NCBI RefSeq assembly: GCF_000315625.1
Contig: NW_005434577.1
Location: forward strand, 160,147 to 224,146
Source: Guillardia theta CCMP2712
Lineage: Eukaryota > Protista > Cryptophyta
Direction: 5' to 3'
Length of the DNA stretch: 64,000 nucleotides
Shown: positions 23,741 to 29,526 of the stretch, one piece after another
How positions within the stretch are numbered: the stretch's first letter is position 1
Layout of the letters: every line of letters starts with the position of its first letter
The notes under the pieces: generated by a model
Told to the model about the DNA's origin: nothing
Database searches by the model: none
The model's input: the letters and a program-made list of their open reading frames with translations, nothing else
Program-made: the position numbers and the translations under genes

Positions 23741-26112
23741 TCAGAGGTCGTCGGGATCATCGTCGATGGAGATAGAGATGGCTTCCTTGGCTCTGACCGT
23801 GATGTTCCGCATGGCGCTCAGCATCTCCCTCGCTTGCTGCGCATCCTTCTCGTAGTCCTCCTTCCTCGTCTGATGCGCCTCCAGGCGTCGCGTCAGCGTC
23901 GTCGTGAGTGTGTGCAGAGTCGACTCAAAGCCTTCAGTGCTCTCTTTGCCTTCCGCCGACGCAGGAGATTGTAGTTGCTCCCGCTGCCTCTCTGCGAGCT
24001 GCAGTCGCGGTTTCACCATGCCTTGCATCTTATGCACCTCACCCTCCTTCCACTTGAGAGTATTCTTGTTGGTCTCCTCCCACGACAGCACCACCTGCTT
24101 CTTGATTTCCTTCTCGTACCCCCACGCCCCGCTGAAGACCTTCCTGCCCAGCCAAGCGAGGGCTCCCTGAGACTCATTCAGCACGGGTTTGACCGTTCGC
24201 TCGCACTTGATCAGATGCCTCAGCATGCCGGTGAGAGGGAGTAGCAGAGGCTCATCGAACGTGTCCTTAGACAAGCCCAGGCCCCCCCCTCCCTCTCCTA
24301 CGTTGGCGTACGCGTCCAGAGAAATCTTCATGTCTTTCGCGAGGAACTGCATCATGGTCCTGTGAGACTCCAGCCTCTCGTTGAGACTCTCAGCAAATGT
24401 CTTGTTGGCCTGCTGTACCTCGTCGTAGAGAAGCGTAGCCTTGCCATTGAGGGCAACGATGACTTCCTTGACCTTGACCTCCTTGCTCGCCTCGTCATCG
24501 AACACCAGGTCTTGCTCATGGAAGGTCTCTTGCAGGATTTCATCCACCGCTGCCTTGAACGTGTCGCACGATCGCTCGGTGCAAGCTTGACACTCATGAA
24601 TCATCTTGGAGATGTCGTCGCTGAGAGACTTGTTGGCACCTGTGAGCCGTTTGATCGTCTCTTGTATGTCCGAGAGGATTTTCTCCGTCTCCTCCTTGTT
24701 CTGGGTCACTTTGTTGGCTCGCAGAGCAATGAAGACCTCAAGGTCCTTATTCGTTTGTTCCAGCTTGAAATTCGCTGCATGCAAGGCGTTGTCACCGTTC
24801 GGAGAGCAGCACTGAAGGAGGTTCTGCTTGAAGGCAGGCCAGTGCGATGAGTTGACGATCTCGTTTGCACGCTCCTCCAGGTTCTTGTCCGTCAGTTGTT
24901 CCTGACTGGGCAGGATACCAAACGCGAACTTGGAGAATGTGCGGAACCACTCCTGTTCCCTGAAGTGCGGGGAGCGAAGTCTTACCGCGTCAAGAGTCCG
25001 CATGGCGAGACAAGCAAGACGAGCAGAACCAAGCACAATCTTGTCTCGGTCCTCGATCATCATCGAAGCAGCCACTCGCTCTTTCACTTCCTCCTCGTCC
25101 ATCCCACGGTCATCCTTCTCATCGTACTTGTTGACAAACACAAGAAGTCGGTTCTTCATGATGTGCGGGTCAAACTCGTTCGTCTGCAGGATGTCCTCGT
25201 ACATCTCCTGAGCGGCAGCACTTCCGATTTGCGTATAGTCCACCACCAGGATCACTGACGTCGACATGTTCAGCTGCTGCTTGATCATCTCCCTGAACTC
25301 GCTCCTGTTGCTCTCGTTAGGGCCAGGAAGGTCCAGCAGCGTCAGCCGATGGCTTTTGCTTGCTACTGGCCAGTTGTCGAACGTGGTCTCAATGACAGGG
25401 AGGTTGTCGAGTCGAACGAGGAAGTGCCAAGGGAGATCGAGCTTGGCAGCAAGGCACTCCCGCACAAACCAGTTCACACATGACATGTACTTGTACACCT
25501 CTGGCAACGAAGTGCACGCCGCAAGGTCGATGGTAGTAGAGGCACGCTTCCAGCACTCTCGCAGGAATTCCAGGTTCTGATCCATTTCCGCGCTCCTGGG
25601 CTCTCTCTCTATCGACACGAACTTTTCCAGCAGATCCAACCACAGGTCAGAGTTCTGAACTTTGATAACCGTCTCTCCCCGATCGGATTGCCGTATGAGC
25701 ACAGGGAAAGCTGTCTCCGCACAGTTGCGGTGTGGCAGTAGCTCTTTGCCGACAATCATGTTGATCGTTGAAGACTTGCCAGCCTTCATCGTTCCTGTAA
25801 CTGTGAATAGATCTCCGCCGATGCTCAGTTTTAGCTTCTCATTCTCAAGCCTTTCATCGCACATCTTCTTCTGACCTGCTTCGATAAAACCTTGATCTAT
25901 CATCGTCTTGATCAGTCTCAGGTAGTCATTCAGTGACGACAACAAAGTTCTTGTATTGTCATCCAGGTTTTGCTTGAGTAGAAATGGCTTGCCGATGTTG
26001 GTAGCTCTCTCTGTCCTGGGAATTTTTGTGCTGGGTCTGGTCTCTTCGGACTCAGAGCTCCTCTTGTTTGAAGATGACTCCTGAGAGCCCTTGTCCTCCA
26101 TCGCTCTCAAGT
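23741..26112 (-). CDS. Bacterial-type dynamin-like GTPase (CrfC/YjdA-like), uninterrupted ~790-aa exon
   Basis: G1 TGTMKAGKSSTINMIVGKELLP, G2 region ETAFPVLIR, G3 LLDLPGPNE, VILVVDYTQ, G4 FVNKYD, then a long coiled-coil stalk. A splice acceptor (ctaat...ttggcag|) precedes it. Confidence 0.88.
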
Positions 26113-26308
26113 CTGCCAATCAAATTAGAAAAGATATGTAGGATCAATATTCACACGCCAACGAGGGCTGTCACTGATGATCACTGCACAGAGAGCTATT
26201 TGTAATCTATTGTGATTCTGATCTAATTGACTGAGATCTCTCTTGATATATGTCTGAATCACTACTGAAACTTGTGTATGTCATTCGTGCATGTTCGCTC
26301 GTGCATGT

Positions 26309-29300
26309 TCAAGTCCCGTTATGTCGCTTGGCTCGATCGTATCGATCACCAATCGAATCCCTTGATGGGATTGGTTTATCCCAATCTTGGGAGCGACTGA
26401 GGTACAAGACCTGGAGCGTGTCGCGCATGTCAGGAGGAAGCGCCCACCGACCTGAGTCTGACGATGACGAGTCCTCGCCTTGTTTCGCCTTGCCTGACTC
26501 GGGGATTGAAGCTTCTTCAAGCTCATGCAGGAGCTGTAAACCGACCTCAGAGTCCGCCTCAGCCTTGTCTGCTGGTCTGCTCTGAGCTTCTTGCGCGTGT
26601 TCGCGTTGACTTGGGTTTCTCTCCTTCGGCTCATCGGGTTGATCTCCCTGGTCTAGCGATAGCTTGACTAGTGCTTGCGCCTCCTCTCCCTCGATTTGTC
26701 TTCTTCTCTTCTTCCTCTGCTCGTCAATTAGTGTATCGGCCTCTCCTTCCTCTGGCTTTCGCTTCTCCTTCTCTTGTCTCTTGCTTGCTGTCAGGCCTGG
26801 CGTCAGAGTCGCCTGCTGCTTGTCGTGATCATCCCCTTCATGCCCATGCCCATGCTCAATCCTTTCATGTGCAGACGTCATCATCGCTTGCTCGCTGGCC
26901 TCCTCGTCTCGGTGCTTCCTCCTCTCGTCTAGACTATCCGACCCCACCTGCCCTCATACGTCAGACCCTCATACCTCACGGCTACATGTACATCCGGCCC
27001 TACCCTAGAAGCCGAAGCCGCAGACGAGCCGCCGCTCGTCAGTCTTCTTGTCTTGTTGCTCTCACCTGCGCATGGCTTAGACGATCGTAGTCTATCGCCT
27101 CTACCTTACCTCCCCCTTCCTGCACAAACGCCTCGAAGCTTCTATACCCTCCAGGCCTCTCGCACTCCTCCAGCCCTCGGAAACCCTCTCTCAGCTCCTC
27201 GCTCCAGCCCTCCTCGCACTCCCTCCAGTCTGCCCTGTACCCGTCGCTCCTCACGACCCAGCCTGTGCTGCTGATCCACGTCCTCCAGCCCTCCAGCTCG
27301 TGTCTGTCGTTCTCTTGCTTGCTGTGATAGTATTGGAGTAGACAATAGTGCAAGAACACGCTGCTCAGCTTGGTCATCTTCAGCATCATGACATAGCTTC
27401 CGACCTCCACGGCTTGCTCCAGCACATAGAAGTAGAACAAGACCTCCTGACTATTCTGTTCCATGATTTGCTCTCGAAGATGCTCTTCGATCTTGTCCAT
27501 CCCGTCCTCCCATGACACCGACGGGTCCAAGCATGGATTGATAACCTCCTCCTGCCATATCTCCAGCGATGCCTCAAGCTCTTCAGCTCTAGACGAGACT
27601 CTAGGTAACTCCTTGCTGATCGTGTAGTCCAGGATAGCAATGAGCAGCTTGTCGTCCGACATGCTGCGACCTGTCTGACTTGCCTTCCATGCTTCGAACG
27701 ACTGCGACGAGATCTTGTTCTTATCCACGTGCTTGCGCAGAAGCTGAACAAGCTCGAAACCTACGAGTTTCTTGTTCACCTTTGAACGGAAATTATCTAA
27801 ATATCTCTTGGTGGAGAACCTCGTGTCTTCATATTGCAGGAAGTACATCAGCACGATCGAGCACATTCTCCACCGCGGACTATCCGCTCGCTGCTCTCCA
27901 AGGAAATACTTCACCGCCTCCATCGTCCTGTCTCTGAAAGACTTGGCGTCTTCAGGGCTGTAAGCCAGCACGTACGTGTCTGCCTTGGACGTGTCTGTGA
28001 GGGGAGGATAGCTCGATACGACATCCTTGGCAGCATGCAGTGCAGCTGTACTGCTCCTGATGTCTCTCAGAGCCTCGCCGTCGCTCACCAGGCAGAAGCC
28101 TTCCGGAATGTCATCAACGTTCATCGATACACAGGGTTGAAACTCTTTGCATCTCCTCGCACAGTCTAGTAAGACGCTGTCAAGCGGTCTGTTGCAAGCG
28201 AACATCCCTGTCTCTGCATCCAGAAGCGACTCAAACAGCTTCGACTCGTCGCTTGCTTTCTTGCCCTTGCCGCATGTCAGCAGCAGAGTCCAATGCTTGG
28301 GCAGCGCCTTCACTTCCGGATCTTGCGGCAGACCTTCTGGCACTCCCTCGATCTTTTCCCGACAAGCGTCCATGACCACAAGCACCCTCGGATGATATCC
28401 TGATACATCTTGCTCGAAGTCTCTGAAGAACTTGAAAACATCCTTCATTGACAGCATCTTATCACCCATCTCCCGGAATGATAACCCTCTCACTTTCTCC
28501 ACGTCCGTCGGTACCAACATCTGATCCTTGCTCCTTGCCTCGTAGATGCCATGGCCCGCGTAGAAGAAGATCACCAGCTCCGGACACGCTCGCTTTAGCT
28601 CCCTCAGACTCCTCCTGAGGTACCTCTTCATCTCGGACAGACTCTTGGGGTTCGAGCTCAAGACCGAGTGACACTGCGGGAGTGAGCAGAGCTTCTCATG
28701 CAGCTCCGTCGCATCCTTCACGGCCCTCGCAAGCGGCTCGAGCTCTCCCTGGTAGTCGTTGAGCCCCATGCACAGCCCGTACACCCGAGGAGGCTCCAGG
28801 AAGATCAAGTCTGCCTCGAAGCTCCGCTCCGTCCGACTGTCCTCGAAGCTCTGGGAGCGATACCTCGACTGACCTGACAGAGCGCTAGCAACACATCGAG
28901 TCACTTCCATACCTTCCTCTCACGCCCTCCTCCTCTTGTCTACGCTCTTACCTGTTGCGCCTCGAGAAGCTCTCGTCCGCTCTACCTCCCTCTAGAGCAA
29001 GCTCCATGACTCGCTTGACTAGCTCCCCAGCACGCTCGTCGTCACCGCCTCCTCCCTCGCCAAGCAAGACGGCTTCATCCGCCTTGCGTGTCTCTTGTCT
29101 CGTGCTGCTGTCAGAGCCTCTCCCTCCTCTCCTCTCTATCGCCTTCATCCTAGCACGAGTCAAGCTCCCGCCTGTCGCCCGGCCTGACACAGCCTCGTCC
29201 TTGCTACGAGCTCCCCAGCTCTCTGAGGTCATGACGTGCAGGCAGAGCTCGTCATCCGGCCGCTCCTCCTCTCTGAAGCACAGGAGCCGCTCCAGGAGCG

Positions 29301-29526
29301 AGTCTTGGCCCTCCAGGTCGATGATGCTGATGAGGCGGGTGGTCTTTCGTTGCATGCCGGCCAAGAGCTTGTCTAGCAAGCGCTCGGTCTGAGAGACGGG
29401 GCTGCTGCTCCATGCCTGGAGGTCTGAGAAGGTCTTGAGGAGAGAGTCAAACCTCTTCTGCACGTATCCCTGCATGGCAGGCTTGATGCTGCTGCTTGCT
29501 CCGTCTCCTTGCTTCCTCTCTGACAT
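26309..29526 (-). CDS. Caspase-like protein, unit 2 (ART-ANK half absent; possibly spliced to the dynamin-like exon)
   Basis: Exon 1 29526-28952. Exon 2 runs to 27066 with FFYAGHG/VMDACR. Exon 3 starts at 26947; homology to other units ends ~26385. Confidence 0.8.

What the first reader, a model, noticed from the sequence alone, without database searches (positions are those of the whole stretch)
23741..29526. Module swap: a CrfC/YjdA-like bacterial dynamin replaces the ART-ankyrin half
Seen: unit 2 matches the other units until ~26385, then switches to unrelated DNA and a same-strand ~790-aa intronless GTPase exon with a branch point and acceptor (ctaat...ttggcag| at 26113). A phase-matching donor ATT G|gtgatc at 26349 would give an in-frame caspase-dynamin fusion via a 237-nt intron; Vps34 uses a similar gtgatg donor. 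Known: GTMKAGKS..IN.IVG.E.LP, LLD.PGPNE and DYTQ are characteristic of E. coli CrfC-type dynamin-like proteins, and some bacterial dynamin-like proteins (B. subtilis DynA) limit phage spread. Inference: an HGT-derived membrane-remodelling module recruited into the cassette.
Basis: partly seen in the sequence, partly recalled or inferred. Interest (0 to 1): 0.82.

Follow-up and report, generated by a model that had tools for sequence, protein, structure and literature searches.

The report
Bacterial-type dynamin gene beside truncated caspase gene
In the alga Guillardia theta, a complete gene for a bacterial-type dynamin-like GTPase was joined by a DNA rearrangement to a broken caspase gene inside a repeated gene array, but it looks like a separate gene with its own upstream DNA, not a caspase-dynamin fusion.

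Summary
Unit 2 of the tandem array follows the other units down to window 26385-26379 and then switches sharply to DNA found nowhere else in the window. That DNA carries an intact, intronless ORF at 23741-26101(-), 786 aa from its ATG. The protein has a Dynamin_N domain and resembles bacterial CrfC/YjdA-type dynamin-like proteins.

- The window is Guillardia theta CCMP2712, JH993061.1:160147-224146.
- The dynamin has three copies: this one, a near-identical one 444 nt beyond the window end, and a solo copy on scaffold JH993089.
- About 2.9 kb (ORF, 280 nt upstream, 240 nt downstream) is shared with the solo locus. The homology starts exactly at the array breakpoint, with a GGA microhomology.
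- The truncated caspase reading frame stops 24 codons after the junction.
- Hanusia phi has a stand-alone 806-aa orthologue.
- The RNA contigs carry only the solo copy's variants (40 of 40 sites) and show no splice 26350>26112.
- Five DNA runs from two studies hold the junction stretch. None of 13 probable RNA runs does.
- dN/dS of 0.14 indicates that both the array and solo copies are under constraint.

A bacterial origin is likely, but the donor is unresolved. The fusion is unsupported.

The parts
23741..26101 (-). Coding sequence of the dynamin-like GTPase (GUITHDRAFT_145121). It is 786 aa, intronless, with ATG at 26101 and TGA at 23741-23743.
   Evidence: ORF list. Dynamin_N 3.5e-15 and CrfC model 1.2e-44. 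It aligns end to end with the 806-aa Hanusia phi protein at 63% identity. The same 792-codon frame is open in both paralogues, with dN/dS 0.14 against the solo copy. The annotated 336-aa model skips conserved parts.
26102..26381 (-). Upstream region that came with the dynamin gene; probably its promoter and 5' UTR.
   Evidence: About 87% identical, with indels, to the DNA upstream of the solo paralogue (L001:9115-9385). The last 40 nt or so before the ATG are almost identical. No RNA contig covers 26115-26384.
23504..23740 (-). 3' flank shared with the solo paralogue; probably the 3' UTR.
   Evidence: BLAST homology to L001 ends at 23504 and the region is diverged with indels. The RNA contig of the solo copy runs 242 letters past position 23716.
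26379..26385 (.). Rearrangement junction between exon 3 of a caspase-ART-ankyrin gene and the dynamin segment. The GGA at 26381-26379 is present in both parental sequences.
   Evidence: Alignments of the four units and of the solo locus. The identical junction is present in the second array copy at L003:9100-9110. DNA contigs and five DNA runs hold it.
26309..26947 (-). Truncated exon-3 reading frame of the caspase gene. It has 189 codons in common with the other units, then 24 new codons and a TGA at 26309-26311.
   Evidence: Protein alignment with the 431-432-aa ORFs of units 1 and 4; sequence.
27039..28910 (-). Caspase-like ORF (Peptidase_C14), 623 codons, open.
   Evidence: Pfam 2.9e-09. 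dN/dS is 0.47-0.65 against the other copies. No gene model is called here in the annotation.
28948..29556 (-). Upstream ORF of the caspase gene in unit 2. Similarity to the other units ends at 29545.
29546..29812 (.). Second rearrangement of unit 2. These 267 nt stand where the other units have about 1070 nt (unit 1: 16665-17734), so the Vps34 copy of unit 2 (ORF 29759-30763, + strand) lacks its C2 domain.
   Evidence: Self-BLAST. Pfam finds PI3K_C2 in units 1, 3 and 4 but not in unit 2.
23129..23297 (.). Array spacer just after the N gap (23029-23128), 100% identical to 63832-64000. It marks the start of the block that recurs beyond the window end.
   Evidence: Self-BLAST. L003:12190-21746 equals window 64000-54444, and L003:5992-12189 matches window 29496-23298 at 98.4%.

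Best explanation
The ORF at 23741-26101(-) is a complete, separately promoted, intronless gene for a 786-aa bacterial-type (CrfC/YjdA-like) dynamin-like GTPase. It belongs to a three-copy family in Guillardia theta that also has an orthologue in Hanusia phi.

How it got there (shown). A segment of about 2.9 kb holds the gene, 280 nt upstream and 240 nt downstream. It is also found at a solo locus on scaffold JH993089. In the array it was joined, at a 3-nt microhomology, to a caspase-ART-ankyrin gene broken inside exon 3. That left a truncated caspase gene, which stops 24 codons past the junction, lying head-to-tail with the dynamin gene. The composite was then copied again within the array; the second copy begins 444 nt beyond the window end.

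What it does (inferred). The protein is a GTP-driven, self-assembling mechanochemical enzyme. It has a canonical G domain (G1, G3 and G4 intact) and a long helical stalk. It lacks a signal peptide, so it probably acts in the cytosol or nucleus, on membranes or possibly on nucleoprotein. The array copies are kept by selection but are silent or weakly expressed in ordinary cultures.
For: - Break and ORF.
- Family assignment. AF2 model (pLDDT 68, G domain 80-90) matches SynDLP, BDLP, mitofusins and IniA at Foldseek probability 1.0.
- Solo paralogue: L001:9115-11995 matches window 26381-23504 and nothing else in 21.7 kb.
- Junction microhomology.
- Constraint: 59 differences in 2379 nt, 43 of them at third codon positions. 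dS is 0.078, dN is 0.011 and dN/dS is 0.14. Frames are equal and open, while the flanks are about 87% identical with indels.
- Second array copy: same junction, only 2 nt different in the ORF.
- Stand-alone Hanusia orthologue.
- RNA: contigs run contiguously over 23716-26114 without joints and carry the solo copy's letters at 40 of 40 sites.
- Junction stretch: held by 5 DNA runs of 2 studies and by none of 13 probable RNA runs.
Against: - No transcript of the array copies was seen at all. Their start site, and even their expression, are therefore inferred from the shared upstream DNA and from purifying selection.
- Logan contigs drop rare variants, and the raw RNA run gave only 16 reads.
- The RNA contig ends at 26114, only 13 nt upstream of the ATG and 1-2 nt from the proposed acceptor. 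The true 5' end is therefore not established.
- Which locus is the parent cannot be told from the boundaries alone.
- The cellular function is not tested.
Confidence: 0.75

Rival explanations
1. Caspase-dynamin fusion. The truncated caspase exon 3 splices from the GT at 26349 to the AG at 26113, giving one protein with a caspase-like N-terminal part and a dynamin-like C-terminal part.
For: The donor and acceptor are present and in phase, and a pyrimidine-rich tract precedes the acceptor. Both genes are on the same strand, 208 nt apart. The composite is kept in two copies with an identical junction.
Against: - The acceptor-like sequence is equally conserved in the solo copy, which has no caspase upstream, and the donor GT is GC there.
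- The solo-copy RNA contig includes the AG itself and then ends without any unlike letters.
- No joint was reported in any run.
- No array-type dynamin variant appears in RNA contigs, 0 of 40 sites.
- The Hanusia orthologue starts with its own Met and an unrelated N-terminal tail.
- An in-frame TGA closes the caspase frame at 26309-26311.
Confidence: 0.07
2. The array copies are dead duplicates. The rearrangement merely wrecked one array unit, and the dynamin copies there are unexpressed passengers on their way to becoming pseudogenes.
For: - Unit 2 is damaged twice: the ART-ankyrin half is lost and the Vps34 C2 part is lost.
- No RNA contig carries array-type variants or the junction stretch.
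- The annotation calls no caspase gene in unit 2.
- The only two differences between the array copies are non-synonymous.
Against: Since the split from the solo copy (dS 0.078), neutral drift in the array lineage alone would give roughly 70 non-synonymous changes. Only 20 are seen in both lineages together. There is no indel or stop in 2379 nt, although the flanks have many indels.
Confidence: 0.13
3. Misassembly. The junction at 26379-26385, or the second copy, is an artefact of assembling a repeated region full of gaps.
For: The region has N gaps at 21687-21786 and 23029-23128. The dynamin blocks of the two array copies are almost identical. Assemblies of tandem arrays are error-prone.
Against: - The junction is inside a 25.8-kb gap-free contig.
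- An independent k-mer assembly of the raw reads spans it without a mismatch.
- A 2021 DNA run of another study also holds every sampled word.
- The two copies differ at 3 positions in the dynamin block and by 3.5% in the adjoining caspase part, so they rest on different reads.
Confidence: 0.03

Closest known systems
E. coli CrfC / YjdA (also called RdcA) and the proteobacterial 'dynamin family proteins' of about 800 aa
   Same: It is the best family match: NCBIfam CrfC model at 1.2e-44 over residues 89-567. It shares the G-domain signature motifs and a conserved C-terminal GAWG...WG[YW]E piece. Size (about 790-830 aa) and one-G-domain layout are similar. The nearest named relatives are Vibrio, Pseudomonas, Psychrobacter and Enterobacteriaceae proteins at 27-34% identity.
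   Different: The score of 152.7 bits is far below the equivalog cut-off of 1146. The protein sits on a very long branch and is encoded in a eukaryotic nucleus. No YjcZ-like partner gene was seen next to it. CrfC's known partners are the beta-clamp (PMC6374313) and, as YjdA/YjcZ, the diguanylate cyclase DgcE (PMC6510439). From general knowledge, these are bacterial systems.
Structurally solved bacterial dynamin-like proteins: SynDLP (7zw6), Nostoc BDLP (2j69), IniA (6j72), Campylobacter DLP1/2 (5owv), LeoA (4aur)
   Same: The overall fold of the model is the same: a G domain followed by a long helical stalk. Foldseek probability is 1.0, with E values from 2e-13 to 3e-6.
   Different: Only 10-15% identity and TM-scores of 0.2-0.3 for the whole chain. 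Sequence searches of the PDB find none of them. Residues 602-685, where a membrane paddle would be expected, are modelled at low confidence.
B. subtilis DynA and the Eleos (LeoA/LeoBC) defence system
   Same: These are dynamin-like GTPases with reported roles against phage (PMC8844932, PMC12998192). The gene studied here lies in an array of caspase-like, ART and ankyrin genes that looks like a conflict locus.
   Different: DynA has two G domains and this protein has one. The PADLOC LeoBC match is marginal (1.3e-4, 19 bits). No functional link to defence was tested.
Eukaryotic dynamin-related proteins, Mx, OPA1 and mitofusins
   Same: Same superfamily, with a dynamin-type G domain.
   Different: No Dynamin_M, GED or Fzo_mitofusin domain was found. 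Drp1 is matched only at E 0.47 by sequence. All close relatives outside cryptophytes are bacterial.

Membership tests
Dynamin superfamily | Dynamin-type G domain above the Pfam gathering score | tested here: met
   PF00350 Dynamin_N, 56.9 bits against a cut-off of 27, residues 107-312 of the 792-codon frame.
Dynamin superfamily | Intact nucleotide-binding motifs G1 (GxxxxGKS), G3 (DxxG) and G4 (NKxD) | tested here: met
   GTMKAGKS, DLPG and NKYD fall in invariant or nearly invariant columns of a 30-sequence alignment.
Dynamin superfamily | G domain followed by a helical stalk (fold) | tested here: met
   The AF2 model has long helices at 437-527, 537-601 and 687-775. Foldseek matches SynDLP, BDLP, mitofusin, IniA, dynamin and Drp1 at probability 1.0.
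CrfC/YjdA equivalog (NCBIfam NF007368) | Score above the curated equivalog cut-off | tested here: not met
   152.7 bits against 1146. It is a homologue in the wider family, not an orthologue-grade match.
CrfC/YjdA equivalog (NCBIfam NF007368) | Adjacent YjcZ-like partner gene | tested here: not met
   ORFs flanking the solo copy and the array copy have no Pfam family. The pairing in E. coli is taken from PMC6510439.
CrfC/YjdA equivalog (NCBIfam NF007368) | Binding to the beta sliding clamp | not testable with these tools
   This needs biochemistry. The N-terminal 45 residues are unrelated to the bacterial proteins and are modelled as disordered.
Classical eukaryotic dynamin / DRP | Middle domain and GED | tested here: not met
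   No PF01031 or PF02212 hit at E up to 0.01. Drp1 is matched only at E 0.47 in the PDB sequence search.
Eleos (LeoA/LeoBC) defence dynamins | Significant match to the PADLOC models, with the partner genes present | tested here: inconclusive
   LeoBC at 1.3e-4, 19.2 bits, with no LeoA hit. No partner genes were seen.
Horizontally acquired gene of bacterial origin | Nested within a bacterial clade in a rooted tree | tested here: inconclusive
   In a 96-row tree the three cryptophyte sequences form one clade (100) on a branch of length over 5. Its attachment is unresolved and the tree is unrooted.
Horizontally acquired gene of bacterial origin | Absent from other eukaryotes while widespread in bacteria | tested here: met
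   Outside Guillardia and Hanusia, the closest hit of an exhaustive search of 1.84 billion representatives has about 30% identity. Every hit that carries a name is bacterial. Most hits are unnamed metagenomic proteins, so the absence is not absolute.
Horizontally acquired gene of bacterial origin | Truly in the eukaryotic genome, not contamination | tested here: met
   It lies on 200-kb and 287-kb scaffolds next to Vps34 and a copia-type element. Run X1 holds a contig of the full-length transcript, and X2 holds all but its first ~90 nt. An orthologue is present in the Hanusia phi protein set of EukProt.

The most novel reading that the evidence does not exclude
The two array copies of the CrfC-like dynamin may be a conditionally expressed arm of a cryptophyte conflict or immunity locus. 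On this reading they are switched on together with, or read through from, the truncated caspase gene during infection or stress. A bacterial dynamin-like GTPase would then have been co-opted into a eukaryotic caspase/ART/ankyrin defence array, much as Mx and GBP proteins serve animals.
Probability: 0.1. Interest if true: 0.75.

Novelty: new member of a known kind. Interest (0 to 1): 0.42.

Why it matters
CrfC/YjdA-type dynamin-like proteins appear to be known only from bacteria, and papers searched here mention no eukaryotic member. Guillardia and Hanusia carry a selected, transcribed nuclear family of them. This adds a case of a bacterial membrane- or nucleoid-acting GTPase retained by a eukaryote.

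It also corrects three database entries (GUITHDRAFT_145121, _145122 and _146421). They are modelled as 336 aa with false introns, whereas the real protein has 786 aa.

The locus shows at nucleotide resolution how a tandem array of caspase-ART-ankyrin genes is remodelled by microhomology-mediated joining and later re-duplication. Two of the three dynamin copies sit inside such an array, which gives a concrete, testable hint of a role in conflict. It is no more than a hint.

Tried and rejected
- Exact look-ups of the 786-aa dynamin and the 623-aa caspase ORF in the gene index found nothing, because the annotated models differ.
- The raw RNA run X15 gave only 16 reads on 6 kb, too few to judge expression or starts.
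- Polarising the 19 amino-acid differences between array and solo copies with Hanusia as outgroup was uninformative: 3 against 2, with 14 ambiguous.
- I considered an RNA-mediated (retrogene) origin for the array copy, because the 3' homology boundary lies close to the end of the solo-copy RNA contig. I rejected it. The copies also share 280 nt upstream of the ATG that no RNA contig covers, and there is no poly(A) remnant.
- The 'joint' 23535>23716 in run X1 is not an intron. It is the diverged 3' UTR of the solo copy aligning only in a conserved 32-nt patch.
- The tree could not name a donor lineage.
- A sequence search of the PDB gave nothing useful.
- A profile word search with the three cryptophyte proteins found no further eukaryotic relative.

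
Full report
**1. The observation**

The window is a set of tandem units of about 15 kb. On the minus strand each unit carries a caspase-like gene that continues into an ADP-ribosyltransferase (ART) and ankyrin repeats. On the plus strand it carries a Vps34 copy.
- Self-BLAST gives unit 1 at 10648-20135, unit 2 at 26379-33299, unit 3 at 36765-47660 and unit 4 at 52272-62301. 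Caspase-only half units and several N gaps lie between them.
- Pfam confirms Peptidase_C14, ART, Ank, PI3K_C2 and PI3Ka in the expected ORFs.
- Unit 2 matches the others from 29545 down to 26385-26379. There a four-way alignment shows a clean break.
- From 26378 down to 23298 there is no match inside the window.

That unique stretch holds one long minus-strand ORF, 23741-26119. It is 792 codons from a TTG and 786 aa from the ATG at 26101.

**2. What the protein is**

- Pfam gives Dynamin_N (3.5e-15), and NCBIfam gives the CrfC model at 1.2e-44. The score of 152.7 bits is far below the equivalog cut-off of 1146.
- In an alignment with 27 bacterial or metagenomic relatives the G1, G3 and G4 motifs are invariant or nearly so.
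- No middle domain, GED or mitofusin domain is found. A sequence search of the PDB gives only Drp1 at E 0.47.
- An AlphaFold2 model has mean pLDDT 68, with the G domain at 80-90. It shows a G domain followed by long stalk helices.
- Foldseek matches the model to SynDLP, BDLP, mitofusins, IniA, the Campylobacter DLP pair, dynamin, Drp1, OPA1, MxB and LeoA. Probability is 1.0 but identity is only 10-15%.
- The N-terminal 44 residues are hydrophilic and modelled as disordered. There is no signal-peptide-like start.

**3. Relatives**

- The word-index search found one close relative: an 806-aa Hanusia phi protein from EukProt. It is 63% identical from end to end and has its own Met and a longer, unrelated N-terminal tail.
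- All other hits have about 25-34% identity. Those with names are Vibrio 'dynamin family proteins' and a bacterial MAG.
- The exhaustive HMMER search of 1.84 billion representatives gave 728 hits. Apart from the cryptophyte entries, the best had about 30% identity.
- The ESM Atlas neighbours are 98-100% bacterial clusters, one of them auto-named CrfC.
- A scan of one genome per prokaryotic species returned 300 relatives. The best 80 are mostly Gamma- and Betaproteobacteria, including the Enterobacteriaceae.
- A 96-row tree places Guillardia and Hanusia together (support 100) on a very long branch whose attachment to the bacterial family is unresolved.
- A profile word search built from the cryptophyte proteins found no other eukaryotic relative.

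A bacterial origin is therefore the simplest reading. The transfer is either old or was followed by fast change, and the donor cannot be named.

**4. Three copies, and where the window is**

The exhaustive search also returned a 336-aa protein, P0052, that is 98% identical to parts of the ORF.
- P0052 is GUITHDRAFT_146421 of Guillardia theta CCMP2712. Its 90% cluster also holds GUITHDRAFT_145121 and _145122.
- Fetching the three loci shows that L002 is the window itself in reverse. The window is therefore JH993061.1:160147-224146.
- L003 overlaps the last 9.6 kb of the window and continues beyond it. L001 is on another scaffold, JH993089.1.
- All three loci have the same open 792-codon frame.
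- The annotated 336-aa models skip residues 373-516 and 604-700. These are conserved in Hanusia and are covered without interruption by RNA contigs. The 'introns' are therefore false and the gene is intronless.

**5. The rearrangement**

L001 matches the window only over L001:9115-11995, which corresponds to window 26381-23504.
- The shared segment is the ORF plus 280 nt upstream and about 240 nt downstream.
- The upstream homology begins exactly at the array breakpoint.
- The three bases GGA (26381-26379) are present both in the intact units (…CTCGGACATG…) and in the solo locus (…GGAGGATAAACC…). The join therefore has a 3-nt microhomology.
- The coding region differs at 59 of 2379 positions, 43 of them third codon positions. 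This gives dS 0.078, dN 0.011 and dN/dS 0.14.
- The flanks, by contrast, are about 87% identical with several indels.

If the array lineage had drifted neutrally since the split, roughly 70 non-synonymous changes would be expected in that lineage alone. Only 20 are seen in total, and there is no indel. Both lineages have therefore been under purifying selection.

The caspase frame of exon 3 has 189 codons in common with the other units. It then runs on for 24 new codons and ends at a TGA at 26309-26311, 208 nt upstream of the dynamin ATG.

Unit 2 is also damaged at its other end. At 29546-29812, 267 nt replace about 1070 nt of the other units, and its Vps34 copy lacks the C2 domain.

**6. The composite is itself duplicated**

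- L003:5992-12189 matches window 29496-23298 at 98.4%. It has the same junction, the same 24-codon tail and the same dynamin gene.
- The second dynamin copy lies 40.7 kb away, starting 444 nt beyond the window end. The 100% match of 23129-23297 to 63832-64000 had already suggested this.
- The block 23129 to about 26850 is practically identical between the two copies, with only 2 differences in the dynamin ORF. The caspase part from 26850 to 29496 is about 3.5% diverged.
- This points to gene conversion, or to a very recent copy followed by conversion of the caspase part from other units. I cannot tell which.
- Upstream of the second composite lie another caspase-domain ORF and a copia-type reverse transcriptase, and the similarity to the array ends there.

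**7. Is the junction an artefact?**

- It lies in a gap-free contig, 23129-48932.
- Logan contigs of a 2011 DNA run tile 23237-26414 with one other letter and two 1-nt insertions, all in the 552-nt piece 23237-23786; the piece 26266-26414 that spans the junction has no differences.
- All sampled words of 26115-26384 are held by four runs of the 2011 study and by one DNA run of a 2021 study. The tool flags the 2021 sample as a possible source of this DNA, so its independence is not certain.

Misassembly is unlikely.

**8. Transcripts**

Two runs behave like RNA. They cover ORFs and leave exactly zero depth on 26115-26384.
- One has a contig of 2641 letters covering 23716-26114. The other has a contig of 2510 letters covering 23687-26028. 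Neither has internal joints.
- Both differ from the window at about 60 positions. At all 40 listed positions the letter is that of the solo copy L001, and never that of the second array copy.
- The transcript seen in cultures therefore comes from the solo locus.
- The longer contig ends at 26114, includes the AG of the proposed acceptor, and has no unlike letters beyond it. No joint 26350>26112 is reported in any run.
- The raw RNA run gave only 16 reads, one of them of the solo type.
- None of 13 probable RNA runs holds more than 4% of the words of the junction stretch.

The fusion has no support. Because array-type transcripts were not seen at all, it is not formally excluded for conditions that were not sampled.

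**9. Mechanism and function**

- Shown: a real DNA rearrangement, an intact gene with its own upstream DNA, purifying selection, a stand-alone orthologue, and bacterial family affinity.
- Inferred: the protein is an active GTPase that assembles on a surface and does mechanical work, as other dynamin-like proteins do.
- Known bacterial relatives act at the replication clamp and nucleoid (CrfC, PMC6374313) or signal to a diguanylate cyclase (YjdA/YjcZ, PMC6510439). More distant DLPs protect membranes against phage (DynA, PMC8844932).
- None of these partners is expected in a cryptophyte cytosol, so the cellular role is open.
- That two of the three copies sit in a fast-evolving caspase/ART/ankyrin array is suggestive of a conflict role but not evidence. 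Caspase ORF dN/dS is 0.38-0.65 between units.

**10. Verdict**

The headline idea of a caspase-dynamin fusion is not supported.

What is there is a new eukaryotic member of a bacterial dynamin-like family, mis-annotated in the databases. It was inserted next to a truncated caspase gene by microhomology-mediated joining and then re-duplicated. Earlier notes of this scan on the same window describe the caspase-ART-ankyrin gene and the variable ankyrin repeats. They fit the context, and I checked them only at the domain level.

Noticed in passing
L003:9386-11746 (equivalent to about 64444-66804 beyond the window end): A second copy of the truncated-caspase plus dynamin composite (GUITHDRAFT_145122) lies 40.7 kb from the first. 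Its dynamin ORF differs by 2 nt, while the adjoining caspase part is about 3.5% diverged.
   Followed up: yes
L001:9386-11746 (JH993089.1): A solo dynamin paralogue (GUITHDRAFT_146421) has no array genes within 10 kb on either side. It is the copy seen in RNA contigs.
   Followed up: yes
window 23741-25486; L001 and L003 at 10001-11746: All three annotated gene models are 336 aa with two false introns and a late start. The real ORF is 786 aa, as shown by the Hanusia orthologue and an uninterrupted RNA contig.
   Followed up: yes
window 40590-40610 (unit 3, exon-3 ORF): Unit 3 lacks 8 nt that units 1 and 4 have. This splits its exon-3 frame into two ORFs (39970-40599 and 40532-41266), so this copy may be a pseudogene.
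   Followed up: partly
window 23203-23265: A 63-nt piece lies in a 144-nt RNA contig of depth about 5659 in run X2 and is multi-copy in DNA. It belongs to an unknown abundant RNA or repeat.
   Followed up: no
window 24103: In both RNA-like runs a further contig fits the dynamin ORF only from 24103 upward and continues with unrelated letters below. It may be another transcript sharing a short piece, or a chimera.
   Followed up: no
window 7666-10064, 21787-23028, 49399-51958: Caspase-only half units sit between the full units, each cut by N gaps. The copies at 21787-22697 and 49412-50322 are 99.8% identical.
   Followed up: partly
L003:127-2631: A copia-type reverse transcriptase ORF (RVT_2, 4.8e-58) lies at the edge of the array. 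It is followed by a more diverged caspase-domain ORF at L003:3852-4406.
   Followed up: partly
window 27039-28910, 14164-16023, 41358-43217, 56068-57930: The caspase-like ORFs of all units stay open (619-623 codons) but evolve fast, with pairwise dN/dS of 0.38-0.65 and dS up to 0.29.
   Followed up: partly
window 16928-21931, 29759-32300, 44405-47600, 59043-62300: Vps34 is present in at least four tandem copies. One is annotated as Vps34B, and the copy in unit 2 lacks the C2 domain. This is unusual for a normally single-copy core gene.
   Followed up: partly
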